This document shows, one piece after another, positions 618-38,406 of a stretch of DNA of 64,000 bases. The translations under genes and the position numbers were made by a program. Under the pieces are notes generated by a model. That model ran no database searches. It worked only from the letters and a program-made list of their open reading frames with translations, and was not told the origin of the DNA. Within the stretch, counting starts at the first letter, position 1. Every line of letters begins with the position of its first letter. The stretch is taken from IMG/VR virus record IMGVR_UViG_3300041402_000314, positions 124,001 to 188,000 of that record. One strand, written 5' to 3'.

Positions 618-625
618 TATAAATA
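618..625 (+). promoter_or_regulatory. T4-type late promoter upstream of the small-protein array
   Basis: TATAAATA; same motif recurs before most structural genes. Confidence 0.7.
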
Positions 626-657: not shown

Positions 658-903
658 ATGAGCTTTAAGGATAAGATTATTAAGTATATCTGGAATAATC
701 TATTAGCATTTGATAGACAAGTTAATGCTCTTCTATGCGGAGACCCAGAGGAAACTATCAGTTCTCGTATGGGTAAATTAGTTGAGCAAGATAGATGTCC
801 TTTCTGTTATTTTATCTGTACACATTTTCTACACAAATTAGACCCAGATCATTGCCAGAAGTCAATTGACAGAGACGAAGGCGATGATGAAATAAAATTT
901 TAG
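658..903 (+). CDS. Phage hypothetical protein, Cys/His-containing
   Basis: RBS AAAGGA; motif NALLCGDPEETISSRMG...C..C...LDPDHC. Confidence 0.7.
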   Translation: MSFKDKIIKYIWNNLLAFDRQVNALLCGDPEETISSRMGKLVEQDRCPFCYFICTHFLHKLDPDHCQKSIDRDEGDDEIKF

Positions 904-913
904 GAGAATAAAT

Positions 914-1519
914 ATGTCAAGTTTCAAAGATTACATGACCAAAGAAAAGAATAATGATATCATCAATGATGGACATTTCCATGTAGAAAAGATGGGAGGT
1001 AGAACAGGTCCACCTATTAGAGTTAAGACCGATGATGGCAGAACAACCCATATCCATAATCAAAGTGATGGTAAGGATACAGTCGAAGCTAAAGATGTAG
1101 GTGGTTTCGTTAATAGGGATGATATAGAAGACAATGTAACTTCTCTTCCAAAAAGCCCAAATCATACCCATATGCAAACTGATGGACAGCATACCTCACC
1201 AGCTATATATCCTGAAGTAGAAGAAGATCAGAAGGGTATTAGTATCGGTGGTATCTCTGAGAAGATAGAACAAGTTCTTGAGGGTAAGGGTAAATTCGAT
1301 AAGAAAAATCTAAAAGGTAAAAATACCAAGATAATAGACCCTCATAACAAAGATAAGATTTGGTATTTTGATGATATACAGGATAATAAGATTAGAGTGA
1401 CACAAGTAGTTTTAGGTAGCATTACAGGTCAAAGTGTTATGTCACTTAAAGATGTGAATGAATTACTTAAAGGATTAGGCAAACAAAGTTTCGGTACTTT
1501 AGGATTTAGGGAGAATTAA
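914..1519 (+). CDS. Putative internal head protein
   Basis: N-term MSSFKDYMTKE resembles T4 IP targeting peptide; internal EKIEQVLE|G copy of array leader. Confidence 0.55.
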   Translation: MSSFKDYMTKEKNNDIINDGHFHVEKMGGRTGPPIRVKTDDGRTTHIHNQSDGKDTVEAKDVGGFVNRDDIEDNVTSLPKSPNHTHMQTDGQHTSPAIYPEVEEDQKGISIGGISEKIEQVLEGKGKFDKKNLKGKNTKIIDPHNKDKIWYFDDIQDNKIRVTQVVLGSITGQSVMSLKDVNELLKGLGKQSFGTLGFREN

Positions 1520-1522
1520 ATA

Positions 1523-1857
1523 ATGGATTTAATAGAGAAGATAGAACAAGTATTAATTGAAGGTAAGATCAAAAAGTTTAAGGGTGATAATCCTTTTTCA
1601 AAATCAAATCTATATATGGTTGGAGCTGGTATGGATACGAATGGAAATCATGTGGTATCGATAAAATTTCCTAATTCCAGCGCATTTACAATTCAAACCG
1701 CTGGTAATTTGAACACCGCTCATGATGCATTGAGAGGGGTGAAAGATTATGAGACCGAAATAGATGATTCCACAAAAAGAAGATAGAAAAAGAGATTGTT
1801 GAATATGTCAAGGATTATGGGTCTAAGGCACAACAATCAAAACTAAAAACATATTAA
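1523..1857 (+). CDS. Putative internal head protein; frame breaks at A5 run 1774-1778 (track ORF ends 1786)
   Basis: Leader MDLIEKIEQVLIE|G; -1 frame continues KKIEKEIVEYVKDYGSKAQQSKLKTY to TAA 1857, just before the next RBS. Confidence 0.55.
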
Positions 1858-1868
1858 AGGGGAATCAA

Positions 1869-2255
1869 ATGAAAATCATAGACAGGATAGACAATATTTT
1901 AAATGAAGCATCTAAAGAAATAGATGAGACTTCTGGTACTGAATTGGAAATGTATATAGAGAATGATAGCCAATTATATAGTCAACAATTTATTCCTATA
2001 GTAAAAAATCTGATGACTAAGAGAGCGCAGGGAAAATATGATAGTAAAAAGGCTGTTAAGCTCTTCATGTATCTTATGGAATCTGGAGCCAAGAAATATG
2101 TTAAGGATTTTGGCGGTACTTGGAATATAATGTTCAATAAGCCTACTAGAGAGTGGACAGCCAAAAGATTTGTGGAGAATTTCGATAACGAAGCCGAAAT
2201 AGGTGGTTACGATGAGTACATACCTAAAAAATATCAAAAGAAAGCTAAGAAATAG
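1869..2255 (+). CDS. Putative internal head protein
   Basis: Leader MKIIDRIDNILNE|A. Confidence 0.65.
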   Translation: MKIIDRIDNILNEASKEIDETSGTELEMYIENDSQLYSQQFIPIVKNLMTKRAQGKYDSKKAVKLFMYLMESGAKKYVKDFGGTWNIMFNKPTREWTAKRFVENFDNEAEIGGYDEYIPKKYQKKAKK

Positions 2256-2263
2256 GAGAAATA

Positions 2264-2992
2264 ATGAGAATCGTAGAGAAAATAGATAAGATATTAAACG
2301 AAGGTAAGAAGACAAAGATCAAGAAGCCGTCATGGAAGGAACTAAAGAAGCGTATCCAGAAACTTAAGAAGATAAAGTTTAAGAAACCTTCTAAGCCTAA
2401 GAATTCCATGACCATTACTAGCAGAATAAAGAAGAGTGCGAAAAAATTATTCAAAAGTCTCTTCAAAAAGATGAGATTAACAGAATCTAGTGATGCTAAA
2501 GTAAAAGCATTGGCTGATTTTAAGGAAGTAGAGACTGATGAAATCACTGATTTGAGTTATGGGTTTGAGGTTGATAGTGAAGAATATATGGTTCTTACTG
2601 ATTCAGAAGCGGATGATGCTACAAAGGAATATATAGAGGAAAGTATTTGGGCTTTTAACACAGATTTTCTTCTTGGTCAGATGACGTTAGCAGATGTCAA
2701 TAAATATTATGGTCTCGAAGATTCATATTACGATGAAGATACAGAAGAAGATGTCGAAATCGGTGATGATGAAGAAGTATTCTATATGGGTATGGGTATG
2801 ACATTAGAGGAATGGATTAAAGAAAAACAAGGCGAGTATGAAAGTGGTAATCAGGAATTACTTCGTCTCATAGATGATATCGATGAATTTGTAGAGGAAG
2901 CTATCAGATGGGATGGTAGAGGTCACTTCTTATCTTCTTATGATGGTGATGAGAATGAAGAAGGCGATTACTACATCTACAGAACAAATTAA
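2264..2992 (+). CDS. Putative internal head protein: basic segment followed by highly acidic domain
   Basis: Leader MRIVEKIDKILNE|G, Lys-rich stretch, second LTE|S site, D/E-rich C-terminal domain. Confidence 0.65.
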   Translation: MRIVEKIDKILNEGKKTKIKKPSWKELKKRIQKLKKIKFKKPSKPKNSMTITSRIKKSAKKLFKSLFKKMRLTESSDAKVKALADFKEVETDEITDLSYGFEVDSEEYMVLTDSEADDATKEYIEESIWAFNTDFLLGQMTLADVNKYYGLEDSYYDEDTEEDVEIGDDEEVFYMGMGMTLEEWIKEKQGEYESGNQELLRLIDDIDEFVEEAIRWDGRGHFLSSYDGDENEEGDYYIYRTN

Positions 2993-3006
2993 GGAGAACT
3001 TAGATA

Positions 3007-3234
3007 ATGGATATTACAGAAAAGATGGAAATAATGTTAGGTGAAGCTTTTGACGTGGAAGAGTTCGATGATGTCAAATCTAAGGCATCTAAGAAGCTCT
3101 TCAAGGTCGTAGAAATTTTAATGAAGGGCGGTGCAAGGGTATTCAAGTTAAGACCTCTTGAAGGCAAAGCTACGGCTTCTGATGAGTTTGATGTCGAGAA
3201 CAAGAAATTCTTTAAAGAATACGTGGCTGCATAA
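3007..3234 (+). CDS. Putative internal head protein
   Basis: Leader MDITEKMEIMLGE|A; RBS GGAG. Confidence 0.6.
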   Translation: MDITEKMEIMLGEAFDVEEFDDVKSKASKKLFKVVEILMKGGARVFKLRPLEGKATASDEFDVENKKFFKEYVAA

Positions 3235-3246
3235 GGAGAGGGAAAT

Positions 3247-3583
3247 ATGAGTATTATAGACAAGATAGATAATATCACTGAAGGTAGAGATACGAGAGGA
3301 GTTCTAACAAAAAGAATCGATTTCGAGAAATTAATTAAGAAGATAAAAGGCATGACTGCTAGAAATGATCATACTGGAGCCTATATATTAATTTCTTCTG
3401 AGATACTGAAAAAATAAGAAGCTGGTAAAGATTTTTACTGCTATAGAAGATATTACCAATGTCGATAATGGGATGTCGGGGAATCTCTCTAAATTTAGTC
3501 ATGAGAAATATCAAGAAATGATGAATCTAGTCAAAGCAAAATTAGATGACCGAGATTATCAAGCAATATACCAATCAACATAA
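3247..3583 (+). CDS. Putative internal head protein; frame breaks at A6 run 3409-3414
   Basis: Leader MSIIDKIDNITE|G; TAA at 3415, +1 frame continues NKKLVKIFTAIEDITNV...YQST to TAA 3583, just before the next RBS. Confidence 0.55.
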
Positions 3584-3591
3584 GGAGAACT

Positions 3592-3936
3592 ATGAGTAAA
3601 TTAATAGATAAGATAGAAAGTGTATTGAATGAAGCTAAGAAAAGAAAAGCCTCTTTCGGGAAAACCAAAGATATGAGTTATGCTGTCCAGATTGATAGCC
3701 TAGATAGTAATGATTTCTATACTCAGGCATTCGGTAGACAAATTAGCGATCTGAGGAAAGCGGATGAATTTATTAAAACAGCTAAGAAAGGTTATGTTGA
3801 TGGTAAAGGCAAAGCAACACTTCCTGCCGTCAGAAAATGGGTAAAGGAAAATCAGCCTTCAGAATTCTATGCTAAATGGAAATCAGATAGTTCTTGGTAT
3901 AAAGATGATAGCATAGAAATCTTTTATAAGAAATAA
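3592..3936 (+). CDS. Putative internal head protein
   Basis: Leader MSKLIDKIESVLNE|A. Confidence 0.65.
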   Translation: MSKLIDKIESVLNEAKKRKASFGKTKDMSYAVQIDSLDSNDFYTQAFGRQISDLRKADEFIKTAKKGYVDGKGKATLPAVRKWVKENQPSEFYAKWKSDSSWYKDDSIEIFYKK

Positions 3937-3944
3937 GGAGAATC

Positions 3945-4118
3945 ATGAATTTCAAAGATTATATATTAAACGAAAAATCTAAAGAAGCTTCAGAAGTTCT
4001 ACAGCTTATGGATAAGGACGAAGACGCTGATTATGGAAAGGCTTTAAAAGCTGTTCTGAAGAAGTATCCTAAAGTTGATAAAAAGGCTTTGGAAAAAGAA
4101 TTGAATAAATATATTTAA
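3945..4118 (+). CDS. Putative internal head protein (57 aa, not in ORF track)
   Basis: RBS AAGGAG; MNFKDYILNE|KSKEASEVLQLMDKDED... Confidence 0.6.
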   Translation: MNFKDYILNEKSKEASEVLQLMDKDEDADYGKALKAVLKKYPKVDKKALEKELNKYI

Positions 4119-4131
4119 GGAGATAGAACTA

Positions 4132-4359
4132 ATGGACATATTAGATAAGATAGACGCAGCACTAAACGAAGATTCAACTGAAAACGCAAAGAAAACCCTT
4201 CAAGCTATTATAGGTACTCTCAAGAAGTCTGAAGGAAAAGATAAGGATGAGATGCTAGATATGGCTAATGGTATAATGGATTACTACAAGAAAGAAAAAT
4301 CCTTTGCGCCTAAACAAGCCGAATGGATTTTCAATACCTCTAAAGCATTATTTAAGTAA
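4132..4359 (+). CDS. Putative internal head protein
   Basis: Leader MDILDKIDAALNE|D. Confidence 0.65.
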   Translation: MDILDKIDAALNEDSTENAKKTLQAIIGTLKKSEGKDKDEMLDMANGIMDYYKKEKSFAPKQAEWIFNTSKALFK

Positions 4360-4368
4360 GGATATAAA

Positions 4369-4581
4369 ATGGATATTATAGAAAAGATAGATGAAACATT
4401 AGAAGAAGCCACATCATCCGATGGTATAGATGTAAAGGGTTTACTGAATGATTTAAGAAAGGCCGAGAACAATATGAAACAATTAGCAAGTACGGTCAAT
4501 CATTTTAAACCCGGTAAAGTTAGAGCAGATGATTATGTCGAACCTATTAAAAATGCTGTTAAAAAATTAAAAGGTAAGTAA
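4369..4581 (+). CDS. Putative internal head protein
   Basis: Leader MDIIEKIDETLEE|A. Confidence 0.65.
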   Translation: MDIIEKIDETLEEATSSDGIDVKGLLNDLRKAENNMKQLASTVNHFKPGKVRADDYVEPIKNAVKKLKGK

Positions 4582-4593
4582 AGGATTAATACT

Positions 4594-4842
4594 ATGTCAA
4601 AGACATTCATAGAATACCTCTCAGAGGCTAGATTTGACGTTATAAGCAAAGAAAAAACAAAAGATGGGCGGAAGCTTCACCATACAGTAGAAATCGCCTC
4701 TAAGACGAAAATAGACGTTGATGATGTCGCTACTAAAGTTGGTTATCCTCCAATGGCTTATGGATTGTCAAAATCCAAGGTAACTAAACTGGATAATGGA
4801 AATTTTAAATATGAATGGGATTCTGCTTCAAATGCAGGATAA
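4594..4842 (+). CDS. Putative internal head protein
   Basis: MSKTFIEYLSE|AR, close to T4 IPII/IPIII MKTYQEFIAE|A. Confidence 0.65.
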   Translation: MSKTFIEYLSEARFDVISKEKTKDGRKLHHTVEIASKTKIDVDDVATKVGYPPMAYGLSKSKVTKLDNGNFKYEWDSASNAG

Positions 4843-4850
4843 GGAGAGAT

Positions 4851-5084
4851 ATGGATATAACTGAGAAGATAGATGTCATTCTCCTAGAAAACGAGCTAGA
4901 TGAGGGTATAAAAGAACTGGCAAAGAACGCTATAATCTCAGTATTGATAAGTATAGCAGTAATGGTAGGCGGTGGCTCACCAGTTAAATTAGCAGTCGAG
5001 AAGGCTCATAAAGAACATCGAGTTACGGATGTGAGTGTTGATCAGCTCGAAAAATTATATAAGTCAATAAAAACGAGGGTGTAA
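4851..5084 (+). CDS. Putative internal head protein (start revised from 4815)
   Basis: RBS AAGGAG before ATG 4851; leader MDITEKIDVILLE. Confidence 0.6.
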   Translation: MDITEKIDVILLENELDEGIKELAKNAIISVLISIAVMVGGGSPVKLAVEKAHKEHRVTDVSVDQLEKLYKSIKTRV

Positions 5085-5086
5085 GG

Positions 5087-5299
5087 ATGGATATTTTAGA
5101 TAAGATAGAAGAAGCTACAGAGAAAAAGAAATTCAATCAGAAGAAATTCTTCATGGCTTATAATAAAGCGTTTACTGTAATGAGAGATATAGTAAGTGAC
5201 CCTAAATTTGGGTTAGATATTGAAGATGCTAGAAAATTAAATAATATAGCTAAAGAATTTTATGATTCTTCTGAAGAAATATGGAAAAGAAATAAATAA
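5087..5299 (+). CDS. Putative internal head protein
   Basis: Leader MDILDKIEEATE|K. Confidence 0.6.
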   Translation: MDILDKIEEATEKKKFNQKKFFMAYNKAFTVMRDIVSDPKFGLDIEDARKLNNIAKEFYDSSEEIWKRNK

Positions 5300-5370: not shown

Positions 5371-5378
5371 TATAAATA
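5371..5378 (+). promoter_or_regulatory. T4-type late promoter
   Basis: TATAAATA upstream of 5417. Confidence 0.7.
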
Positions 5379-5416: not shown

Positions 5417-6643
5417 ATGGCTGGTAGAGATGTTAGTAATACTAACTTAGGTAAATTAGAAGCTTTGTATGATATCGTTGATGTTTTATCTGGAACTTCG
5501 GGAGAAGGAGAACAAAAAACGGCTTTCGATGAATTATTGATAGCAGAACTTACTCCAGTTATTCAATTACAATTTCCTTATAATATAAATACGGATTTAT
5601 TATCTATAACTACTTCCGTTTCTGGTGATGTCACTCAATCAAATACTAAAGCAGTTATTGAAACTGGAGCTAGTAGTAGCAGTTCAGCATCTATACAAAG
5701 TAAGAAAGTATTGAAATATAATCCCGGTCAAGGTTCCTTAGTTAGATTTACCGCGTTATTTACTGCTGGAGTAAATGGGTCATCTCAGTTAATTGGAGTC
5801 GGAGATGATCAAGATGGATTTTTTGTAGGTTGTGATGACACTACTTTTGGTATTTTAAGAAGACAGAATGGTGTTGATACATGGACATATCAAACTAATT
5901 GGAACGGTGATAAAGCAGATAATAGTGGAACTTTACCTGTTATAGATTTCACTAAAGGTAATGTATTTCAAATTCGATATCAATGGTTAGGTTATGGTGC
6001 TATAAAATTTTATATAGAAAACCCAAGCAATGGTAAATTAATATTAGTACATACAATTCCATATGCTAATGCTTATACGATAGCATCTATTTACAATCCT
6101 ACTTTACCATTATTTGTAAAGGCAGAAAATACTACAAATGATACTAATATTAAAATAGAAACATCTTCTTTAGCTGGATTCGTTGAGGGCAAATTAGAAA
6201 CTAAATCTTCTTCATTAGTGAAAGCTAAAGGTAATTTAAAAGCTGCAATAACTACAGAAACTAATCTTATAACGATTAGAAACAAAAGTACGTATCAATC
6301 AAAAACTAACAGAGTTAGAGTGAAGCCCATATTTATTTCATTGGCGAACGAAGGAACTAAAACTGTCAAGTACAGGTACTTGTTAAATGCTACTATCGGT
6401 GGTACGCCATCATTTAATAGTATAGATGTGAATAATTCAGTTATTGAATATGATATTGCTGGAACAACAATAACTGATGAAGGAAGTGAACTTTTTACTG
6501 TAGATTTAGCAAAATCTGATTCCGACCGAATAACTTTACCATTTGATATTCCTTTGAATCCCGGAGATTCATTAACTATTACAGCGGAGTCATCTTCATC
6601 TACAGATGCAGAAGCTTCAGTTACATGGGAAGAATTATTTTAA
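5417..6643 (+). CDS. Probable beta-rich virion structural protein
   Basis: Late promoter; Ser/Thr/Gly-rich beta-strand pattern; no family assignment possible by eye. Confidence 0.55.
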   Translation: MAGRDVSNTNLGKLEALYDIVDVLSGTSGEGEQKTAFDELLIAELTPVIQLQFPYNINTDLLSITTSVSGDVTQSNTKAVIETGASSSSSASIQSKKVLKYNPGQGSLVRFTALFTAGVNGSSQLIGVGDDQDGFFVGCDDTTFGILRRQNGVDTWTYQTNWNGDKADNSGTLPVIDFTKGNVFQIRYQWLGYGAIKFYIENPSNGKLILVHTIPYANAYTIASIYNPTLPLFVKAENTTNDTNIKIETSSLAGFVEGKLETKSSSLVKAKGNLKAAITTETNLITIRNKSTYQSKTNRVRVKPIFISLANEGTKTVKYRYLLNATIGGTPSFNSIDVNNSVIEYDIAGTTITDEGSELFTVDLAKSDSDRITLPFDIPLNPGDSLTITAESSSSTDAEASVTWEELF

Positions 6644-6654
6644 AGGGAACTAAC

Positions 6655-6849
6655 ATGGATTCAGATATATTGGTTGATATGAGATCAAAGAAAATATTAG
6701 GCGGTTCCGCTTTCATACATAAGATAAAAGGTTATGTGATATGGAAAGTCTTGTCGATAGATAAGGCAGGAAAGATAAAAGATAATTTTACCTTCAAAGA
6801 CGAGATATTAGCCACTGAGAAATTCGAAGATATCACGGAGATCGATTAA
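6655..6849 (+). CDS. Hypothetical protein
   Basis: MDSDILVDMRSKK..., RBS AAGGG; track start 6625 overlaps upstream gene. Confidence 0.45.
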   Translation: MDSDILVDMRSKKILGGSAFIHKIKGYVIWKVLSIDKAGKIKDNFTFKDEILATEKFEDITEID

Positions 6850-8030
6850 TGTTTTCCAAATACTGCCTCTTTGGGTGTCCAGCCGCAACGTAATCTGGAA
6901 GCTATGACACCATACTTATTTCTGGATATTTCAGCCCATTCTTTCATGGATTTTTTATCACCATCTATAGTTAGACCTTTCTTTTTTCCATAGACTGCCT
7001 TTTCGGGAGACCAACCTATATTCATTCTCCCTCTAATTATTTCTGGGGTATTCCCAGAAAGTTCAGCCCATTCTTTTATAGTTTTAGTTTCTCCGTTGAA
7101 TGTTAAATATTTCTTAGTTTTATGTTCGGAAAATACAGCTTCCTTTTCAGACCATCCATTTCCCAATCTGGTATGTATAGTATTGAAATTAGTTCCAGAT
7201 TTATTAGACCATTCCTTTACGGTTTTAGTTACGCCATTTATTGTTAAATATTTCTTATTTTTATGTTCTGAAAATACTGCTTCTTTAGGAGACCAACCAG
7301 CTTTTAGCCTCCCTCTTATAGTATTAAAGTCTATACCAGAAAGTTCAGACCATTTTTTCACAGATTTAGTTTCACCCTCTACAGTCAGATACAATGTTAT
7401 TTTACATTCATCTCTTATTATTGTCTCGATTCGTTTGCGAATTTGTTCAGGTGATTATTTCTTACCAAATTGGGAATGTTTTTCACCTCTTTGGGAGTCA
7501 CTAATTAATTTCCTAGTTTCTTCAGAATGTGTTTTACCATACATACCATTTTTCTCACCAGATGACATTTCTGAATATCTCAGTCTTTCTTCTGGATTTT
7601 CAAAACGTCTGATTTGTGCCTTTCGTAATTTCTCTATGGTTTCTTCAGTCGGTATATACCCACAACATCCTTCACCTCCATTAGTCTTATTGAGCAAAGG
7701 CCCTAATCCCAAATCTACTCTACCTACCACTCTTATTATATATCTTTCTTTAGCAAAGGCTTCCTGTTCTGTTACATTTTCTAATATCTTGATTATTTTA
7801 GGCTCATAACCATCTTCTATTATTTCTCTAAGTAGATTTAATTTATCCGAATCAATATCTGTATTAATAGCATCTTTGGCATGTACTTCACATCTATCAT
7901 CAAGACCTTTACCTCCATAGATAGGAAGATAGTCTAGTGTTAATTTACCGCCATCATAAATGAAAGTACCTGTATGTCTTGGGTCTAATATTATATATGT
8001 ATAGAAAATAGGGTCTTCGGGATTGGTCAT
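6846..8030 (-). pseudogene. Free-standing GIY-YIG-like homing endonuclease (NUMOD3 plus 4 tandem DNA-binding repeats) split by one in-frame TAA
   Basis: 8030-7455: YTY..LDPR...IYGGKG..DR..H...E..L.N...GGEG and GKTHSEETRK; after TAA 7457-7455 the same frame continues SPEQIRKRIET... into 7394-6846 with four LTxxGETKT.KEW.E.SG....TI..R...GWS..EAV repeats. Confidence 0.75.
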
Positions 8031-8196: not shown

Positions 8197-8781
8197 ATGA
8201 GTTTTAATTTTACTAACACTCCAGACAGAGCAGTGTATGAAAATACTTTAGCTGAAAGTATCGAAATTTTCGGAATTTCGATAGAATATCTCGTGGTTGA
8301 ATATGACGAAACCAAAGAAAAACTCTATGCTGAAGACAGCAAACCACATACAACCGCTAGATATTTGATGAAAGCACAGGCGGAGTATCTGGGTTCCGAG
8401 GATTTCATGCTAACAAAATTTGGGCTACAGAGCAGTGACCAAATGGAACTCGTCATATCAAAATCAAAATTCGAAGAAATCGTTGGCGATGGTGCGGAAC
8501 CCAAGAGCGGTGATCGTGTATATATTACTTATCAAGATAGATACTATACGGTCGCGGACGCGAAGGAAGAATCCAACATTTTTCTTCAACGGAAATTTTC
8601 GTGGATGCTTATTCTTAACCCTACTGACCTCATTGGAGCCGAAGTTACGCCTAATATTGGTGTACCTGATTATGAGGACGAAGAAGATATTTTTAATGAT
8701 AATGATCTTATCGATGAATTGGATGATGATATCGTAGTAGAGAAGACAGACGATGTTAATCCTTTCGGTGATTGGGAATAG
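8197..8781 (+). CDS. gp14: Neck/head-completion protein, T4 gp14-like
   Basis: E.IEIFG..IEY...LYAED...LTKFGL...D.MEL.I....F.....P..GD.VY motif pattern; position before gp15. Confidence 0.8.
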   Translation: MSFNFTNTPDRAVYENTLAESIEIFGISIEYLVVEYDETKEKLYAEDSKPHTTARYLMKAQAEYLGSEDFMLTKFGLQSSDQMELVISKSKFEEIVGDGAEPKSGDRVYITYQDRYYTVADAKEESNIFLQRKFSWMLILNPTDLIGAEVTPNIGVPDYEDEEDIFNDNDLIDELDDDIVVEKTDDVNPFGDWE

Positions 8782-9564: not shown

Positions 9565-10323
9565 ATGAGAACCTATTTTTTCCCAAATATTTTAAAAAAA
9601 ATACATATAGCTTTCCTTTCCCAATTTAAGGATTTGCAAGTAGCTAAATATGATAGTGCTGGTAATATACTTAATATGAGACAGGTTCCTATCACATTCG
9701 GACATAAAGGTAAGGAAATATCTATAGCTCAGAAGAAGGACAAAAGAAATTATTCAACTTTTTTGCCAAGAATTGCCGTGATGATGTCATCTATTAATCC
9801 TGCTCCTGAAAAGAGTAGAGGTGGTCATCTCGTAGAATTATGTAAATATACTACTGGTAGCGCAGATACCCTCCAGAAGTTATATGGTGGTTATCCATAT
9901 AAAATAGGCTATACTCTAACTATTCTTACCGAACATATGGGTGAGGCCAGTCAAATAATAGAACAGATATTACCTAGTTTTGTTCCATTTAAAAATGTGA
10001 CTATCAGGGAATTTGATTTTCTTCCTAGTTTCACTAGAGATATTCCTATATTATTAACTAGCGTAACTCCTACATTTCAAGATGAAACCACAGAAGATGA
10101 AATCAAGAGAATAGAATTCGATATTGAGTTTGATGTTGATTGTATGTTTTATAGACCTATACTCACTAGTGATATTATCAAAACCGTTAATGTTGATCTA
10201 ATTGATAGTTCTTTAGTTCCAGATATAACAGGAAATGATTTAGCTGGTTATGAATATGCTGTTAGTGGTGACGATATTGATGATTTTGATGTATTGACCG
10301 ATGAATGGACTGAATATATTTAA
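9565..10323 (+). CDS. gp15: Tail sheath stabilizer/terminator, T4 gp15-like
   Basis: YF...I...F...F.DLQV...VPITFG...LPRI...PY.I...L.I......QIIEQILPSF.P...RDIPI.L. Confidence 0.85.
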   Translation: MRTYFFPNILKKIHIAFLSQFKDLQVAKYDSAGNILNMRQVPITFGHKGKEISIAQKKDKRNYSTFLPRIAVMMSSINPAPEKSRGGHLVELCKYTTGSADTLQKLYGGYPYKIGYTLTILTEHMGEASQIIEQILPSFVPFKNVTIREFDFLPSFTRDIPILLTSVTPTFQDETTEDEIKRIEFDIEFDVDCMFYRPILTSDIIKTVNVDLIDSSLVPDITGNDLAGYEYAVSGDDIDDFDVLTDEWTEYI

Positions 10324-21862: not shown

Positions 21863-22207
21863 TTATGAAGTAATTCTACCAGCTTTCGAAGCGTCTTCAG
21901 CGTATATACTGAGAGGAAAGTTAAACGATGCGTACCTATCTCTTTCGACACCCAGACCAAATGGTGGGAATCTCATTGCTTCGAGTTCATCCCTAGAAAC
22001 GTATCCTAACTCAGGGAACCCTTGCCCAAGATCACAGAGACCGAAGAACATTCTGCTCTCCTCGTCATATTCCGTAATTAACCATGTACATGCTCCGCCA
22101 CCGAAAAACTTAACTACTGGTATGAAGTCAGACTCCCCACCAGACTCTTGATTGATCTTAGAGTTCCTAACCAGCTTATCTTCGATTATCTTAGTCATTA
22201 GTTTCAT
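21863..22207 (-). CDS. DUF2958-like protein
   Basis: PVVKFF.GGA.TWLITE.D.....FGLCDLG.G.PELGYVS..EL......G..VERD. Confidence 0.8.
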   Translation of the reverse strand: MKLMTKIIEDKLVRNSKINQESGGESDFIPVVKFFGGGACTWLITEYDEESRMFFGLCDLGQGFPELGYVSRDELEAMRFPPFGLGVERDRYASFNFPLSIYAEDASKAGRITS

Positions 22208-22237
22208 TTCGATCTCCTTTAATTAATGTTTCTCTTA

Positions 22238-22288
22238 ATTATGAGTACAGCTTATCATAGGTAGATGTGGAAGTCAAGAACTATTTTA
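22238..22288 (-). repeat. 51-bp promoter-containing direct repeat, copy B
   Basis: TTGACT-17-TAAGCT; see 20945-20995. Confidence 0.8.
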
Positions 22289-22289
22289 T

Positions 22290-22325
22290 AAAAAAAGGTA
22301 GGCCGAATTAACGACCCACCTTTTT
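22290..22325 (-). terminator. Intrinsic terminator closing the channel/TAXI/YjfK/PspA operon
   Basis: On - strand GGTGGGTCG/CGGCCTACC stem (needs G-U pairs, so strand-specific) then T7. Confidence 0.75.
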
Positions 22326-22346
22326 GATACCATATATTTATTATTG

Positions 22347-23108
22347 TTACTTCTTAAGAGCAGCTAAACGATCTTGAATACTCATAGTGGAAGTATCATC
22401 TCCACCACCCATAGCAGCCGTGATATTGGGGTCTTCATCGAGTCCACCAGTAGGCTTCAGAAGACGTGCTTTCATTGTTGATGCATCGGCAGACGCTTTG
22501 GCATCATCAGTACGTTTCTGCATGGCTTCGATAGCAGTATTGATACCACCTGTCTTGCTCCTAATACCACTGGCAAGCTCGGCACGTTTCGCCTTCTTCT
22601 TAGCACGTTCCTCTGCCAGTTGTGCTTTCTGCATACCCTGTTTTGCCTTCTTAAGTTCGGCACGAGCATCTTTGAGAGTATCAGCCGCTTCAGAAGCGGT
22701 AGCTTCGAGTTCATCCAACATTTCCTTGGCATCGATAGCTTCTTGCTTCTCACGCTCGACATCATCTCCCATTTCTTCGAGAAGACCAAGAAGGGTTCCG
22801 AGACTAGCGGATAGAGAGGCAACCTTTGTATCATCGTCTCCTGCTTCTGCTATCTGATTCTGAAGAGTCTCGGCAGCTTGTAACCTCTGATTATAGAGCT
22901 TGACGATTTCATCCGCTTCCCTCTGCTCCTTTCCATGCTCGACTCTCGCCTGACCAGCTTCTTTAAGAATCTGATTTAGGTTATCATCCATCATTTTGAT
23001 GGTGGCTTCAGTAGCTCCCTCGGTATCGTATCTAACGATAGCACCAGCAAGAGCCTCACCCGCATCTTCGATTTTTGTTTTTGTAAACGCTGATAGAAAT
23101 TTTAACAT
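22347..23108 (-). CDS. PspA/IM30-like coiled-coil protein (YjfJ-like)
   Basis: 253 aa all-helical Ala/Glu/Lys-rich; ends IQDRLAALKK; adjacent to a YjfK-like gene as in yjfJ-yjfK. Confidence 0.7.
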   Translation of the reverse strand: MLKFLSAFTKTKIEDAGEALAGAIVRYDTEGATEATIKMMDDNLNQILKEAGQARVEHGKEQREADEIVKLYNQRLQAAETLQNQIAEAGDDDTKVASLSASLGTLLGLLEEMGDDVEREKQEAIDAKEMLDELEATASEAADTLKDARAELKKAKQGMQKAQLAEERAKKKAKRAELASGIRSKTGGINTAIEAMQKRTDDAKASADASTMKARLLKPTGGLDEDPNITAAMGGGDDTSTMSIQDRLAALKK

Positions 23109-23127
23109 TTTATTTCTCCTTTTTATT

Positions 23128-23808
23128 TTAGATTATTGATAGTGACATAGGATGAATTGTAAATCCTTTATATATGACTATATTAGCAAATACCTCACCC
23201 ATATCATCTTCCAGATCGAATTCGACTGCTACCAGTAGATATTCTGTTTCATCGCTGTTGAGAAACCTGTTGAATAGCATAGCATCACTATTATATTCGC
23301 CTTCTTCGGCTTCAGATTGTTCACCAGTTATTTCAATATCTTCCACAATACTGACTGGAGATGACCATTCACCGCTACCCCAAAGTCGTAAATAGGTTTC
23401 ATCGTCTGGAGTCTCAATATCGGAATAGCCTATTAGACCGTCATCCGTATCAAGCCAATCACTCCAATCTTCATCCGATTGAGGCTCAAACCCATAAGTC
23501 TGTTTGAAGAGAATAACTTCAGAACCATCCTTATTGAGTTGCATGAATACTTCATTATCGTTTTCCGTATTCTTCATGTAGACTCTATAAGTCTTATCTC
23601 CGAATATCTTGAGTCGGGAAATTGCGAGGACGGTGTATTTACCGCCCTCGAACCATTCCAATTCAGGATTTAAGAGAGATGGGGTATCATCCAAAGTTAT
23701 CAGGCTGTTTAATCTGATTCCTAGAGGAGCATCATCATGGACAATACCCTTTTTGGAATCCTTACGTTCCTTTAACTTATGTTTGAAGTAATCACCGACA
23801 AAACTCAT
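23128..23808 (-). CDS. DUF2491/YjfK-like protein
   Basis: PLGIRL...LD, W..WL....GLIG, Y.R.W, MLF.R....EYLLV..E pattern. Confidence 0.7.
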   Translation of the reverse strand: MSFVGDYFKHKLKERKDSKKGIVHDDAPLGIRLNSLITLDDTPSLLNPELEWFEGGKYTVLAISRLKIFGDKTYRVYMKNTENDNEVFMQLNKDGSEVILFKQTYGFEPQSDEDWSDWLDTDDGLIGYSDIETPDDETYLRLWGSGEWSSPVSIVEDIEITGEQSEAEEGEYNSDAMLFNRFLNSDETEYLLVAVEFDLEDDMGEVFANIVIYKGFTIHPMSLSII

Positions 23809-23810
23809 GA

Positions 23811-25415
23811 TTATCTCCCACTCGCCTGATTTCTGATAGAGGGTATAACACTATTTATCTCTTCCAGAAGGGCATCAAATACGGCTGGATTTTTATTCTT
23901 CCATTTGTTGGAAATGATCATATCCATATCAACGGTAATGGTATCGATATCACTGCTACCAAGCCATCCAGATTGGAGTTTACCGTAAGTACCTGCCTTG
24001 ATAGTACCGAACTTATAAATTGGCTTATTACCGGGGTCTTTCAGATTATCAAGACTACCATCTTCGATATTAGCCAATTTAAGTTCACCTCTACTACCAA
24101 GTTGTACGGCATTCCTCATGCTTCTGGCATTGATACCAGTAACAGCCAGTAAACAATCGGCTTGCCCATTAGTAACCTTAAGTACATTACCGCTCATACT
24201 CTTAGAGACCTTTACATTCACATCAGCATAATCGCTATTCTCGGCAACGAAATTTGCCCATGTCAGATAAGAACCAGAGTTTTCATAACCCACGAGAACC
24301 GTATTACCTGAGTCGAGGTCATCAATAGAATTGATATCGGCTTCAGTGTTACAAATAAGATGAGCATACTCGGTATATACAGACGGTATCCTTGAATAAT
24401 TTAGCTTAGAGTTGTTCTTCTGAGCATGAATCCAGTAACCGTCTCTTTGTACAAATGCAGCATCACAATGACCAGCATCTATTTTCTTGAGGTTATCCAT
24501 AGTACCTTCTGTACGAAGAACCTTTCCGTCTACGCTCATAGTAGCATTAGAAATCACGTTACCTGCATAGTAATACATACCGTCTGTTCCACCTGTACAA
24601 ATAGTTAGTGTAGGCTTAACGGCATTTGTTACGTCCTGAGATAGTGCAATATCAGCATCAACGCCTTCAGGAAGATAATTGGTATCGCGTGTACCGCTCA
24701 TCTGAGATACTTCACGATCAAGACGATCAAGCTTTGCTCTTAGCTCGGCATTCTCTCTTGCTTGCATATTAGCTTCCTGTCTCCAACCCTGATAACCAGC
24801 ATTGTTATATTGGTTATATGCAAAACTATTATTTGAATTATCTAGCATCATGTAAAGGAACATCGCATCCCACATACCGTAGCTCGAAGAACCGTAATAT
24901 ACATATGATGGCGCATTGTAGCCACTATAATATGAAGTCCTTCTGGTATCATAAGTTCTCGGATTATAATTAGAAGTCCTTTGGGCAATTTTATTATTAC
25001 TATATTTTCTCTTCAGCTTTGAAGTACGTACTGCTTTCTGCTTAGAGGTCTGAGTCTTCTTATTCGACTTCTTGAATTTAGAAGTATACGCAGCACTACG
25101 CTTCTTCGCTACAGTCTTCGGTGCTTTATTTTTAGCCCTTTGCTTACTAATCTTTGTCTTAGATGAGGTAGTCTTTGAGACTGCCTTCATTTTTCTCTTC
25201 GGCCTAGAAGTTGTTACGGTCTTAGACCTTGAAGAACTTCTCTTTCTTGCGTTTGAGAAAGAGCTTTTTGAACTACCCCAACTCTTTGAACTTGAGAAGC
25301 TTTTGGATGAAGAAAAACTCCTTCCGCCTCCACCCCTCCGAGCCTCTACTTCAACATAAGTCCATGTTGATATGAGAATCAATGCCAGTGCTATAATACT
25401 CAATTTGGTTTTCAT
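23811..25415 (-). CDS. Exported fusion: Ser/Lys/Arg-rich region plus TAXI-family TRAP solute-binding domain
   Basis: Signal peptide then ARRGGGGRS; C-terminal ICTGG..G.YY..G, TEGT.DN......DAAFVQ.D, Y.E..HL, SI.DL, G...SGS..T. Confidence 0.75.
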   Translation of the reverse strand: MKTKLSIIALALILISTWTYVEVEARRGGGGRSFSSSKSFSSSKSWGSSKSSFSNARKRSSSRSKTVTTSRPKRKMKAVSKTTSSKTKISKQRAKNKAPKTVAKKRSAAYTSKFKKSNKKTQTSKQKAVRTSKLKRKYSNNKIAQRTSNYNPRTYDTRRTSYYSGYNAPSYVYYGSSSYGMWDAMFLYMMLDNSNNSFAYNQYNNAGYQGWRQEANMQARENAELRAKLDRLDREVSQMSGTRDTNYLPEGVDADIALSQDVTNAVKPTLTICTGGTDGMYYYAGNVISNATMSVDGKVLRTEGTMDNLKKIDAGHCDAAFVQRDGYWIHAQKNNSKLNYSRIPSVYTEYAHLICNTEADINSIDDLDSGNTVLVGYENSGSYLTWANFVAENSDYADVNVKVSKSMSGNVLKVTNGQADCLLAVTGINARSMRNAVQLGSRGELKLANIEDGSLDNLKDPGNKPIYKFGTIKAGTYGKLQSGWLGSSDIDTITVDMDMIISNKWKNKNPAVFDALLEEINSVIPSIRNQASGR

Positions 25416-25442
25416 GTTACTTTATCCTCCTATATTTCCTTA

Positions 25443-26477
25443 TTAGTTTAAATGTAGTTTTAAAATATTGCTCCACCTTGAACATGACGTATAATCAATT
25501 ACACTCCGATTCACCTCCTCCCTCAATTTACTATTCTGTTTAAATAATATTCCATAACTTTCTATATTGAAGTTAGCTTTATGTAAGGTAACACTATTGT
25601 TATCCTTTGTCAAGTGTTTTAATGTAGCATAGTCATAAAATACCACATCATGTAAACCTGCCTCCAGAGATTCGAGAGCATCTTCAGCGGAATCGAGACT
25701 TGAATATTGTACTCCCAGACTAGATAAAAGTTTACTACTGGCAGTATATGACGATGTAGCTATCTTCCCTTTATTACTTAACCACTTCACTGACTTATTG
25801 GTTTCGCTGATATTACTTAATGTAGCAGTAGCCGCCAGAGTAGCTATAAATGAACTGACTAAGATCAGTGCAATATACATCCAGACGGTAGTAGCAAGAC
25901 GGCCTTTTGCTGTTTTGGGAGCTTTATCACCTAGTCCGACAGTAGTAGCTACCACATGAGTAAACCAATATGTATTGAGCCAACCCTTAAAGCCTTTTCC
26001 AAAATCAGGATTATTACGCTCAAAATACCATATAACGGTAGCGATGAAACCGACAATAATTAAATAATTGATACAGGCGATTATAAAATCTACAGATATT
26101 AAGTTACTGATTACCATTAAGAATGTATTATCGGATTTTGTGGCTATTCCAGACGGTGAAGAAAAGTAAGGGTGTGAGAAATCATATTCCTTTTCTCTCT
26201 CGGATGTAATTGTGATAGCGGATAGACCGACATCGACCTCACCAGTTTTGATTTGAGAAAGTATATCTGTTAAAGAAAGTTCCTTTATATCGTAAGTATA
26301 ACCATTCCTAGAAGCAACTGCTTTCCAGAGGTCTATTGTGATTCCATACCAGATACCTCTCTCATCCTTCATAGAGAAAGGTGGCATCTCATCTGTAGCC
26401 ACTACCAAATGGGTTTGGGCATTAGCAGTAGATGTAATGCTTAGAATTAATAGTATGTAAATAAGTAGTCTTTTCAT
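25443..26477 (-). CDS. GluR0-like ligand-gated K+ channel (SBP S1 - TM1 - pore - TM2 - SBP S2)
   Basis: Signal peptide; PPFS, SAITITSERE, DFSHPY (SBP family 3); two TM helices around TTVGLGD; VFYD...ESYGI. Start set at MKRLL after RBS GGAG. Confidence 0.85.
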   Translation of the reverse strand: MKRLLIYILLILSITSTANAQTHLVVATDEMPPFSMKDERGIWYGITIDLWKAVASRNGYTYDIKELSLTDILSQIKTGEVDVGLSAITITSEREKEYDFSHPYFSSPSGIATKSDNTFLMVISNLISVDFIIACINYLIIVGFIATVIWYFERNNPDFGKGFKGWLNTYWFTHVVATTVGLGDKAPKTAKGRLATTVWMYIALILVSSFIATLAATATLSNISETNKSVKWLSNKGKIATSSYTASSKLLSSLGVQYSSLDSAEDALESLEAGLHDVVFYDYATLKHLTKDNNSVTLHKANFNIESYGILFKQNSKLREEVNRSVIDYTSCSRWSNILKLHLN

Positions 26478-37407: not shown

Positions 37408-38388
37408 ATGAAAGAAAAAATAATTTGTCATATTTGCTATAAAGAATTTAATTCTATTCTTAGTTTATCGAGACACATCAAACCCGCTCACAGTATATCA
37501 AGTAAAGATTATTTTGATAAATTTATCAAAAAAGAGAAAAGTGGTTTATGCTCAGTATGTTCAAATCCTACTCGTTTTGTTAATTTCGGTATAGGATACA
37601 AAAAATATTGTTCAAATAGCTGTCATAACAGAGATAAGAAAGCTCTGACAGATATAAGAGATGCACTTATCTATGAAGAAAAAATAAAAACCGAAACGAT
37701 AGTTTTTGACTGTGAGATTTGCGGATATAAAATTTTTAATAACTATCATGGTATTGGTTCTCATCTAAAACATAAACATAACTTATCTATACAAGAATAT
37801 TATGATAAATATTATTTAGAAAATATATTAGATAAGAAATGTAACATTTGTGACCGAGAAACATCATTTCGCTCTTTAGAAGTTGGGTATACTAAATATT
37901 GCTCTATTTCTTGTAGTAACAAGGAAGAGGTTAACATATTAGCAAGAAAGAAAGGTATAAATAAGAAAGAAGTAAAGGAGAGACAGTCTCGTAATTTATC
38001 ACAGAGAATTTTAAATGGGACTTTTAATCCATTCGCTAAAAAATTTAAAACTGGATATTTTTATTCTGAGAAAAATCAGAAAGATTTGTATTACCGTTCA
38101 TCATATGAATTAAAAGCATATCAAATGTTGGAACAGATGTCTTTAGTTAACATATATGAAACTGAACCATTTAGAATACCTTATAAGGATATGAAAGGTG
38201 TAACTAGAAATTATATACCTGATATTTTGATTATCTATGAAGATGGTATGAGAGAATTGGTAGAAGTGAAACCAGAAAATTTATTAAAGGATGAAACCAT
38301 TCAAATAAAAACAGAATCTGCCAAACAGTATTGTAAAGCCAATAACATGTCCTTTAATATATGGACTGAAAAATTCCTAGAACTATAA
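37408..38388 (+). CDS. Free-standing putative homing endonuclease: repeated Zn fingers plus TnsA-like PD-(D/E)xK domain
   Basis: CxxC...HxxxxH and CxxC...YC repeats; YRSSYE...EPF.IPY....Y.PD.......LVEVKP; start revised to ATG 37408 after GGAG. Confidence 0.75.
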   Translation: MKEKIICHICYKEFNSILSLSRHIKPAHSISSKDYFDKFIKKEKSGLCSVCSNPTRFVNFGIGYKKYCSNSCHNRDKKALTDIRDALIYEEKIKTETIVFDCEICGYKIFNNYHGIGSHLKHKHNLSIQEYYDKYYLENILDKKCNICDRETSFRSLEVGYTKYCSISCSNKEEVNILARKKGINKKEVKERQSRNLSQRILNGTFNPFAKKFKTGYFYSEKNQKDLYYRSSYELKAYQMLEQMSLVNIYETEPFRIPYKDMKGVTRNYIPDILIIYEDGMRELVEVKPENLLKDETIQIKTESAKQYCKANNMSFNIWTEKFLEL

Positions 38389-38391
38389 ATA
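38384..38391 (+). promoter_or_regulatory. T4-type late promoter
   Basis: TATAAATA. Confidence 0.65.
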
Positions 38392-38406
38392 ATTAAAAAG
38401 GATAAT

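What the first reader, a model, noticed from the sequence alone, without database searches (positions are those of the whole stretch)
2264..2992. Two-stage payload: polybasic segment joined by a second protease-type site to a very acidic domain (DNA-mimic candidate)
Seen: leader ending LNE|G, then about 55 residues dominated by Lys (GKKTKIKKPSWKELKKRIQKLKK...), then LTE|S, then about 170 residues rich in Asp/Glu. Established: DNA mimics such as Ocr and ArdA are highly acidic inhibitors of DNA-binding defence enzymes. Inference: the basic part neutralises the acidic part or ties it to DNA until head maturation releases it.
Basis: inference. Interest (0 to 1): 0.6.

Follow-up and report, generated by a model that had tools for sequence, protein, structure and literature searches.

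The report
Capsid-packaged ArdA-like acidic protein precursor

Summary
ORF 2264-2992 (+) encodes 242 aa: a 13-aa leader ending LNE|G, a 61-aa polybasic segment (net +24) ending LTE|S, and a 168-aa acidic domain (net -41), the most acidic stretch in this 204-kb T4-like phage genome.

The leader is shared by at least 12 otherwise unrelated genes. One lies directly upstream of the gp21-type prohead protease. T4 gp21 cuts after L/I-x-E.

The three-part layout is conserved in 31 relatives. Hydrophobic-x-E sites flank the basic module in nearly all, including where the module is internal to longer polyproteins.

The basic module occurs only with this acidic domain. A profile search of 1.84 billion proteins found no other partner.

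The acidic domain folds confidently (pLDDT 97). It belongs to a large uncharacterised phage family, mostly standalone proteins of about 140 aa, with no clear PDB match.

"Short-core" relatives link the family to ArdA domain 3 (hhalign 95.8%, score 52 against at most 19 for shuffles). The window's protein itself does not hit ArdA.

Verdict: most likely a T4-style internal protein carrying an ArdA-related acidic inhibitor, with a dedicated polybasic counter-charge segment. Packaging, cleavage, DNA mimicry and target are all inferred. It is a new variant of known kinds.

The parts
618..625 (+). TATAAATA, a T4-type late-promoter-like motif 33 nt upstream of the first gene of the same-strand array that contains the target. 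The next copy is at 5371-5378.
   Evidence: 27 copies against 15.8 expected. The copies lie 25-45 nt upstream of TerL, the sheath, the baseplate and other structural genes. Function is inferred.
1869..2255 (+). Upstream neighbour, 128 aa, with the same leader (MKIIDRIDNILNE). Its homologue is fused in one polypeptide to the polybasic and acidic modules in metagenomic protein P0019.
   Evidence: 41% identity, E 6e-22 to the N-terminal module of P0019.
2254..2259 (+). Ribosome-binding site AGGAGA.
   Evidence: read from the sequence.
2264..2302 (+). Leader, residues 1-13 (MRIVEKIDKILNE). Candidate capsid-targeting sequence ending in the protease-type site L-N-E|G.
   Evidence: At least 12 ORFs in the genome share it, including one directly upstream of the prohead protease. 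Analogy with the T4 CTS (PMC9026906, PMC3012670).
2303..2485 (+). Polybasic module, residues 14-74, net +24, ending in L-T-E|S (codons at 2477-2485).
   Evidence: an alignable module of about 60 aa with conserved hydrophobic positions in 28 relatives; found only upstream of this acidic domain.
2486..2989 (+). Acidic domain, residues 75-242, net -41. A compact alpha/beta fold belonging to a large uncharacterised phage family.
   Evidence: pLDDT 96.9; no PDB match, only uncharacterised phage proteins.
2579..2641 (+). Strand plus helix (EYMVLTD-SEADD...), collinear with the first strand and helix of ArdA domain 3 in the short-core relatives.
   Evidence: Transitive evidence, low confidence at this end of the alignment.
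2699..2800 (+). Extra acidic insertion of about 30 aa, present only in the forms that carry the polybasic module. Boundaries are approximate.
   Evidence: 31 of 31 polybasic forms have it, 156 of 157 others lack it. One search gives its predicted secondary structure.
2864..2989 (+). C-terminal helix, DGRGH loop and hairpin (...YYIYRTN). This is the most conserved part. It aligns, through the short-core relatives, with the ArdA 'anti-restriction motif' helix and the VF-motif strand.
   Evidence: invariant residues; ArdA features from PMC2731889.
1523..5299 (+). Array of about ten small same-strand genes with the shared leader, in which the target sits. It lies in the late structural region upstream of gp14 (8197-8781) and gp15 (9565-10323).
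   Evidence: A related phage locus, L004, has the same array between gp13 and gp15.

Best explanation
The gene encodes the precursor of a T4-style internal (head-packaged, ejected) protein.

Proposed sequence of events:
1. It is transcribed late with its neighbours.
2. The 13-residue leader takes it into the prohead core.
3. The phage's gp21-type protease cuts after LNE13 and after LTE74. This releases a 61-residue polybasic peptide and a 168-residue, very acidic folded domain.
4. The acidic domain is the effector. It is a derived relative of ArdA domain 3 and most likely acts as an inhibitor of a host DNA-binding defence enzyme (restriction-type). It is delivered with the DNA, so it acts before any phage gene is expressed.
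5. The polybasic module is a dedicated add-on for this unusually acidic cargo. It offsets the charge and/or ties the cargo to DNA, so that the cargo can stay in a DNA-filled head and leave with the DNA.

What is shown: the sequence anatomy, its conservation, the protease gene, the leader family, the confident predicted fold of the domain, the exclusive pairing of the basic and acidic modules, and the profile link to ArdA through intermediates.

What is inferred: packaging, both cleavages, ejection, DNA mimicry, the target, and the role of the basic peptide.
For: The phage is T4-like and has the protease.
- TerL is about 40% identical to gp17 of T4-like cyanophages.
- It encodes a Peptidase_S77 prohead protease, gp14 and gp15, and a portal, leader-ORF, protease, scaffold, MCP module.
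- The MCP carries an I-L-E|A motif ahead of its conserved core. The scaffold starts with a leader-like motif.
- T4 gp21 cuts after L/I-x-E, and CTS leaders are 10-19 residues long (PMC9026906).

The leader behaves as a phage-specific shared signal.
- It is shared by at least 12 unrelated ORFs.
- In another phage the homologue carries that phage's different shared leader.

The sites are conserved.
- Hydrophobic-x-E flanks both ends of the basic module in about 29-30 of 31 relatives. This holds even where the module is internal to polyproteins.
- The upstream gene is fused to the basic and acidic modules in P0019.

Expression context fits late genes: the array lies among late structural genes behind a TATAAATA motif.

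The acidic domain is an autonomous unit.
- It is a standalone protein of about 140 aa in hundreds of phages.
- It folds at pLDDT 96.9.

The link to ArdA.
- Four short-core relatives hit Pfam ArdA below threshold, all at profile positions about 90-148.
- hhalign of short-core against ArdA: 95.8%, score 52.2, against shuffles of 12.0 +/- 2.3 with a maximum of 19.2.
- hhalign of short-core against the window's family: 99.8%, E 2e-30.
- ArdA 2w82 ranks 5th-6th of 350,542 chains for the short-core model.

The basic module is exclusive to this cargo, and within the late-gene array the other leader-bearing cargos are neutral or basic.

Precedent: T4 Ip1-3 are injected anti-restriction proteins that share only their leader (PMC12373910, PMC3012670).
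Against: - There are no virion, proteomic or expression data. No RNA run holds the region.
- L/I-x-E is a short, common motif, and the folded acidic domain contains further copies of it.
- The window's protein does not hit ArdA in Pfam. Neither do any of the 120 full-family members.
- The direct profile comparison fails or is weak (P 0.006-0.04).
- ArdA domains 1 and 2, which make up most of its DNA-like surface, are absent.
- The family's strictly conserved D-G-R-G-H loop is unlike the loosely conserved surfaces of classical DNA mimics. It could be a specific binding or catalytic site.
- Known T4 internal proteins are basic. In T4 most core-protein fragments leave the head (PMC9026906), so a -41 domain might also be expelled rather than retained.
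- The polybasic and acidic forms are a single clade, so their strict co-occurrence may reflect one evolutionary event.
Confidence: 0.5

Rival explanations
1. It is a packaged inhibitor but not a DNA mimic. The acidic domain is a specific protein-protein inhibitor of some other host factor, for example a type IV GmrSD-like nuclease as for T4 Ip1-3, a nucleoid protein or a nuclease. On this reading the ArdA relationship is only a shared small fold.
For: - T4 Ip1-3 each block one specific GmrSD variant by direct binding (PMC12373910).
- The family has strictly conserved non-acidic residues: W55, F57, F61, R145, H147, Y152 and the glycines.
- ArdA domains 1 and 2 are missing.
Against: - The acidity is extreme and is conserved across the family. 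Standalone forms have a mean net charge of -22.7 over about 140 aa, which is typical of DNA mimics.
- The packaged subfamily has added a further acidic insertion.
Confidence: 0.2
2. The roles are reversed. The polybasic peptide is the product kept in the head, as a DNA-condensing internal peptide. The acidic domain is a removable neutralising pro-domain or core filler that is expelled after cleavage, as most T4 core-protein fragments are.
For: - Known T4 internal proteins are basic, and most core-protein cleavage fragments leave the head (PMC9026906).
- The basic module never occurs without the acidic domain, as expected if it must be masked.
- A second gene in this genome (G000:C1:38303-38812) pairs an acidic stretch with a polybasic tail across an L-Q-E site.
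Against: - The acidic domain is an old, autonomous, well-folded family present in hundreds of phages without any basic module. So the basic module is the add-on.
- A 168-aa folded domain with conserved loops is more than a charge mask needs.
Confidence: 0.15
3. It is not packaged and not cleaved. The leader is only a conserved N-terminal helix of a paralogous family of cytoplasmic late proteins, and the x-E motifs are coincidental. The intact protein would be an acidic factor with a DNA-binding or nucleic-acid-tethering basic tail.
For: - There is no direct evidence for packaging.
- L/I-x-E motifs are frequent.
- ArdA domains are fused to DNA-binding ArdC-N in polyvalent proteins and are proposed to be recruited to DNA uncleaved (PMC5512222).
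Against: - The leader also heads the ORF next to the prohead protease and resembles the N-terminus of the scaffold.
- The leader changes with the phage while the cargo stays the same.
- The sites flank the basic module in about 30 of 31 relatives, including internal positions in polyproteins.
- The gene lies in the late structural gene region.
Confidence: 0.1

Closest known systems
T4-type internal proteins (Ip1/IPI*, Ip2, Ip3, Alt) with a capsid-targeting sequence
   Same: - A short N-terminal leader ending in L/I-x-E.
- The leader is shared by otherwise unrelated genes clustered in a variable locus.
- The phage has a gp21-type prohead protease.
- There is precedent for injected anti-restriction function (PMC9026906, PMC3012670, PMC12373910).
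   Different: - The cargo is strongly acidic (-41), whereas T4 Ips are basic.
- A second, internal protease-type site separates a dedicated polybasic module from the cargo.
- Some relatives are multi-module polyproteins.
- The leader sequence differs from T4's.
- Nothing has been shown experimentally.
ArdA (PF07275; Tn916 Orf18 structure 2W82), a DNA-mimic inhibitor of type I restriction-modification enzymes
   Same: - Very acidic.
- Through short-core intermediates, the conserved core (strand, helix, 'anti-restriction motif' helix, C-terminal hairpin with the VF-type strand) is collinear with ArdA domain 3 (PMC2731889).
- Both occur in phages and mobile elements.
   Different: - No direct Pfam or profile hit for the window's protein or its 120 closest family members.
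- ArdA domains 1 and 2 are absent.
- A helical insertion of about 50-90 aa splits the core.
- A distinctive invariant DGRGH loop is present.
- The structural match is not significant.
- ArdA is expressed in the recipient cell rather than packaged in a capsid.
Ocr (T7 gp0.3)
   Same: A small, very acidic phage protein. The standalone relatives of the window's domain sit in arrays of small, probably early, genes.
   Different: No sequence or fold similarity was found. Ocr is made after entry and is not packaged.
Polyvalent proteins and P1 DarA/DarB (injected multi-domain anti-restriction proteins; Iyer et al. 2017)
   Same: - Anti-defence modules delivered with the DNA.
- There, ArdA domains are joined to a DNA-binding module (ArdC-N) that is proposed to bring them to the entering DNA (PMC5512222).
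- Relatives P0019, P0022, P0123 and P0125 are multi-module chains.
   Different: Here the modules are small and separated by prohead-protease-type sites. The DNA-binding partner would be a simple polybasic peptide, not ArdC-N.

Membership tests
T4-type internal protein (CTS-bearing, gp21-processed) | N-terminal leader of about 10-19 residues ending in L/I-x-E | tested here: met
   Residues 1-13 end in L-N-E. T4 rule from PMC9026906.
T4-type internal protein (CTS-bearing, gp21-processed) | The same leader on several otherwise unrelated genes of the same phage, clustered in a variable locus | tested here: met
   At least 12 ORFs, 9-10 of them in window 1523-5299. Related phages have their own shared leader.
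T4-type internal protein (CTS-bearing, gp21-processed) | The phage encodes a gp21-family (Peptidase_S77) prohead protease | tested here: met
   G000:C1:109317-109763, 72.3 bits against a cut-off of 27. ORF 109251-109928.
T4-type internal protein (CTS-bearing, gp21-processed) | Late expression together with head genes | tested here: inconclusive
   Same-strand array behind TATAAATA at 618, among the gp13-gp15 neck genes. No RNA data.
T4-type internal protein (CTS-bearing, gp21-processed) | Present in virions in processed form and ejected with the DNA | not testable with these tools
   The phage is known only from a metagenome.
T4-type internal protein (CTS-bearing, gp21-processed) | The mature product is basic, as the T4 internal proteins are described | tested here: not met
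   The cargo domain has net -41. Only the excised 61-aa module is basic. T4 internal proteins are described as basic proteins in PMC9026906.
ArdA (PF07275) | Match to the Pfam ArdA model above the gathering score | tested here: not met
   No hit for P0001 or for any of 120 family members at E<=1. Short-core relatives score 17-22 bits against a cut-off of 27.
ArdA (PF07275) | Three-domain monomer (domains 1, 2 and 3) | tested here: not met
   Only a domain-3-like core aligns, at ArdA profile positions about 99-182 of 183. Domain definitions from PMC2731889.
ArdA (PF07275) | Domain 3 with the 'anti-restriction motif' helix and the VF-motif strand | tested here: inconclusive
   Met for the short-core relatives (hhalign 95.8%, score 52.2 against a shuffle maximum of 19.2). 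For the window's family itself the same register appears only at P 0.006-0.04.
ArdA (PF07275) | Structural superposition on 2W82 | tested here: inconclusive
ArdA (PF07275) | Large net negative charge | tested here: met
   31% D/E, net -41 over 168 aa. Family mean is -22.7 over about 140 aa.
ArdA (PF07275) | Elongated dimer whose carboxylates trace B-DNA; inhibition of type I R-M enzymes | not testable with these tools
Ocr (T7 gp0.3) | Sequence or fold similarity to Ocr | tested here: not met
   No Ocr family or chain appears among the Pfam, PDB-sequence or fold-search hits.

The most novel reading that the evidence does not exclude
A previously undescribed delivery design. An ArdA-related, DNA-mimic-like inhibitor is pre-loaded into T4-like capsids as an electrostatically escorted precursor. 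The prohead protease converts one chain into a polybasic peptide plus an acidic effector. The two stay together in the DNA-filled head as a pseudo 'DNA-histone' pair and separate on ejection: the peptide goes to DNA, and the effector goes to a restriction-type enzyme. This would show how phages package cargos whose charge is incompatible with condensed DNA. It would also define a new, widespread phage anti-defence family (hundreds of standalone members) rooted in ArdA domain 3.
Probability: 0.25. Interest if true: 0.75.

Novelty: new variant of a known kind. Interest (0 to 1): 0.6.

Why it matters
Internal-protein loci of T4-like phages are known hotspots of injected anti-restriction proteins, but only Ip1-3 of T4 have known targets, and all of them are basic.

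This locus suggests three things:
- Distant, uncultured T4-like phages from marine sediment use the same leader-plus-protease logic.
- That logic can carry a very acidic, ArdA-related cargo.
- Doing so required a dedicated polybasic module bracketed by two cleavage-type sites.

The finding also gives a first functional lead (a link to ArdA domain 3) for a large uncharacterised phage protein family, with 438 clusters in the protein search and 267 IMG/VR loci.

If confirmed, it would give a testable rule for packaging charge-incompatible proteins into capsids. That is relevant to the T4 CTS-based protein delivery platforms.

Tried and rejected
- **Family scans.** Pfam, PHROGs and NCBIfam on the whole protein and on its parts gave only noise and the unannotated phrog_15770. 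The neighbouring small ORFs gave nothing either.
- **PDB by sequence.** Searches with the family profile and with P0206 gave nothing.
- **Direct profile comparison with ArdA.** The family against one ArdA sequence and against seven ArdA sequences gave no hit.
- **Pfam on all 120 family members.** None touches ArdA.
- **Phage and plasmid collections.** These gave one phage hit, a hypothetical protein of Alicyclobacillus phage KKP_3916, and one weak plasmid hit. There were no informative annotations.
- **Complex prediction, polybasic segment against acidic domain.** The result was no verdict (score 0.01). It is evidence neither for nor against binding.
- **Neighbourhood clustering of 80 IMG/VR loci with standalone homologues.** The recurrent neighbours look like a small terminase subunit, a GGCT-like protein and unknowns, judged by eye from the sequences. 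No known anti-defence genes appeared. One locus has a weak ArdC-N hit and an integrase nearby.
- **Position of standalone genes within contigs.** There is no clear bias towards contig ends (reading).
- **Electrostatics.** These could not be computed because model coordinates are not exposed.
- **Scaffold or core-protein homology.** I considered this for the acidic domain and rejected it, because no similarity turned up in any search.

Full report
**1. The observation**

The window is bases 124001-188000 of a 204,149-bp IMG/VR virus record, estimated 89% complete. The likely source is a marine sediment metagenome, and cold-seep runs hold small shares of it.

ORF 2264-2992 (+) has an AGGAGA ribosome-binding site and encodes 242 aa.
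- Residues 1-13 end in L-N-E and are followed by G14.
- Residues 14-74 hold 26 K/R against 2 D/E (net +24, pI 11.5) and end in L-T-E, followed by S75.
- Residues 75-242 hold 52 D/E against 11 K/R (net -41, pI about 4).

Among all 478 ORFs of 60 aa or more in the genome, this ORF contains the most acidic 168-aa window. It also contains one of the three most basic 61-aa windows.

**2. Genomic setting**

The phage is a distant T4-like myovirus:
- TerL is about 40% identical to gp17 of T4-like cyanophages.
- A tail sheath, a baseplate wedge and other tail proteins are present.
- gp14 is at 8197-8781 and gp15 at 9565-10323.

Outside the window there is a canonical head module:
- portal (genome 107055-108713);
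- a 102-aa ORF (108931-109239);
- a Peptidase_S77/gp21-type prohead protease (109251-109928; 72 bits against a cut-off of 27);
- scaffold (109997-110782);
- major capsid protein (110860-112002).

The target lies in a tight same-strand array of small genes (about 658-5299). The array is bracketed by the T4 late-promoter motif TATAAATA at 618 and 5371. The same motif precedes TerL, the sheath and the baseplate genes. In a related phage (locus L004) the same array lies between gp13 and gp15.

**3. The leader**

At least 12 ORFs in the genome begin with a variant of M-x-I-I-E-K-I-D-x-x-L-N-E. Nine or ten of them are in window 1523-5299, and their products are otherwise unrelated. The similarity is visible at the DNA level as 29-65-nt repeats at the 5' ends of the genes.

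Further points:
- One leader-bearing ORF sits directly upstream of the prohead protease, the position of gp67/gp68 in T4 (gene order from my own knowledge).
- The scaffold begins with a similar motif ending in x-E|G.
- The MCP has an I-L-E|A motif ahead of its conserved core.
- In a different phage (L015) the homologue of the target carries that phage's own leader, and its neighbours share that leader type (M-S-K-A-x-E-V-I...E). So the leader follows the phage, not the cargo.

This matches the known behaviour of T4 capsid-targeting sequences. They are 10-19-residue propeptides that take internal proteins into the prohead core. gp21 removes them by cutting after L/I-x-E (PMC9026906). They are the only feature shared by otherwise diverse injected anti-restriction proteins (PMC3012670, PMC12373910).

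**4. The second site and the basic module**

The word search found 438 relatives of the acidic domain. A second search over a longer length range found 105.

Thirty-one proteins carry a polybasic stretch directly upstream of the acidic domain:
- In 29 of the 31, a hydrophobic-x-E motif (LTE, LVE, LQE, IKE, MKE, IRE, MCE, LNE and others) sits at the junction. This is the position where the standalone homologues start.
- A hydrophobic-x-E motif also immediately precedes the basic stretch in nearly all. This includes proteins in which the module is internal to longer chains (P0019, P0022, P0123, P0125).
- In P0019 the first module is a homologue of the window's upstream gene 1869-2255 (41% identity, E 6e-22). 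Two adjacent genes here are therefore one polyprotein elsewhere.

The basic stretch is not mere low complexity. It aligns as a module of about 60 residues with conserved aromatic and aliphatic positions.

The module is exclusive to this cargo:
- A word search with it found only long forms.
- An exhaustive HMMER profile search of 1.84 billion representatives found six proteins. All six are long forms carrying the acidic domain.

Two further associations:
- Within the late-gene array the other leader-bearing cargos are neutral or basic (net +1 to +8). The only leader-matching ORFs elsewhere with acidic content are genome 49368-49670 (net -10) and the acidic-plus-polybasic gene 38303-38812.
- The 31 polybasic forms all carry an extra acidic insertion of about 30 residues, which 156 of 157 other family members lack. 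This is probably one clade and so one evolutionary event.

Both cleavages therefore have strong comparative support. They remain inferences.

**5. The acidic domain**

With a 120-sequence alignment, AlphaFold2 gives a compact alpha/beta domain at pLDDT 96.9.

The family is large. There are 267 loci in IMG/VR alone. It is viral and carries no Pfam, PHROG or NCBIfam annotation.

Most members are standalone proteins of 135-150 aa with a mean net charge of -22.7. They sit in arrays of tiny same-strand ORFs.

No enzyme and no solved fold matches the domain.

Invariant residues include W55, F57, F61, E119 and N122, a D-G-R-G-H-F loop, and a Y-D-G-x-E...Y-I-Y-R hairpin.

**6. The link to ArdA**

The second homologue search turned up four "short-core" relatives (P0206, P0214, P0216, P0209). 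They keep the family's first strand and helix and its C-terminal helix, loop and hairpin. In place of the helical insertion they have a short segment.

Evidence linking these four to ArdA:
- Each hits Pfam ArdA below threshold (E 2e-4 to 1e-2), always at profile positions about 90-148 of 155.
- I took seven annotated ArdA proteins, from plasmid R46 and six phages.
  - hhalign of the short-core alignment against them gives 95.8% probability and score 52.2.
  - 200 column-shuffled ArdA alignments gave 12.0 +/- 2.3 with a maximum of 19.2, and the reversed alignment gave 12.4.
- The greedy alignment is collinear over the whole of ArdA domain 3. It includes the helix that carries the "anti-restriction motif" at the ArdA dimer interface and the C-terminal VF-motif strand. 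Domain definitions are from PMC2731889.
- hhalign of short-core against the window's family gives 99.8%, E 2e-30.

The limits of this link:
- The window's family against ArdA directly gives nothing. With short-core match columns it gives only P 0.006-0.04, in the same register.

I conclude that the family is probably a derived offshoot of ArdA domain 3. It is not a member of the ArdA family: domains 1 and 2 are absent and the Pfam criterion is not met.

**7. Mechanism**

The best-supported reading is a T4-style internal-protein precursor. The leader targets it to the prohead core, and the gp21-type protease cuts after E13 and E74. This yields a 7.3-kDa polybasic peptide and a 19.6-kDa acidic effector. 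The effector is ejected with the DNA and blocks a DNA-binding defence enzyme.

The polybasic module looks like an adaptation for packaging a cargo whose charge is otherwise incompatible with condensed DNA. This is inference. The complex prediction returned no verdict.

An analogy exists in polyvalent proteins. There, ArdA is joined to DNA-binding ArdC-N, which is proposed to bring it to the entering DNA (PMC5512222).

The rival readings are:
- a specific inhibitor that is not a DNA mimic;
- reversed roles, with the basic peptide retained and the acidic domain expelled, as most T4 core-protein fragments are (PMC9026906);
- no packaging or cleavage at all.

**8. Novelty**

Leader-bearing internal-protein hotspots and ArdA are both known. 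As far as the searched literature shows, the following are not described:
- an ArdA-related acidic cargo in such a locus;
- a dedicated polybasic module bracketed by two prohead-protease-type sites;
- the large standalone family itself.

I class the finding as a new variant of known kinds, with moderate to high interest. All functional steps still need experimental testing.

Noticed in passing
window 1523-5299 (+): About ten small genes share the leader M-x-I-I-E-K-I-D-x-x-L-N-E and 29-65-nt DNA repeats at their 5' ends. Their products have no family hits. This looks like a hyperplastic internal-protein locus between the neck genes.
   Followed up: partly
window 914-1519 (+): This 201-aa ORF has an internal leader-like motif (I-S-E-K-I-E-Q-V-L-E followed by G-K-G-K) in mid-protein (DNA repeat at 1252-1274). 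It could be a two-cargo polyprotein or a recombination relic.
   Followed up: no
G000:C1:38303-38812 (-), outside the window: A second gene with a leader-like N-terminus, about 100 acidic residues, an L-Q-E motif and then the most basic 61-aa window of the genome (+31). This is the same acid/base pairing in the reverse order.
   Followed up: partly
window 23128-25415 (-), within 22000-26000: Two adjacent genes lie in an island of higher G+C (0.39-0.415 against about 0.33-0.35). One encodes a 226-aa acidic protein (168-aa window of -33). The other encodes a 534-aa protein with a hydrophobic N-terminus and a Ser/Lys-rich basic region.
   Followed up: no
window 6846-8030 (-): A GIY-YIG/NUMOD3 homing-endonuclease gene (7455-8030) and a 182-aa ORF made of four repeats of about 45 aa with no Pfam hit (6846-7394). 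Both are on the opposite strand, inside the late structural cluster.
   Followed up: partly
window-wide, e.g. 618, 5371, 8163, 27215, 35616, 37307, 46500: TATAAATA occurs 27 times against 15.8 expected, mostly on the + strand 25-45 nt upstream of structural genes. This is consistent with T4-type late promoters.
   Followed up: partly
metagenomic proteins P0019, P0022, P0123, P0125: These are longer chains (347-574 aa). Extra N-terminal modules precede the polybasic and acidic pair and are separated from it by hydrophobic-x-E motifs. P0125 is labelled as coming from a Pseudoalteromonas MAG.
   Followed up: partly
L005 (ENA contig, 130,654 bp), gene at 6001-6420: A standalone homologue lies about 5 kb from an ORF with a weak ArdC-N hit and about 5 kb from a phage integrase. 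It may be on a temperate element.
   Followed up: no
L001:2807-3325 (Alicyclobacillus phage KKP_3916, OQ846916.1): The only GenBank phage record hit by the protein search. It is a 172-aa 'hypothetical protein', 35% identical to the acidic domain, with no leader and no basic module.
   Followed up: partly
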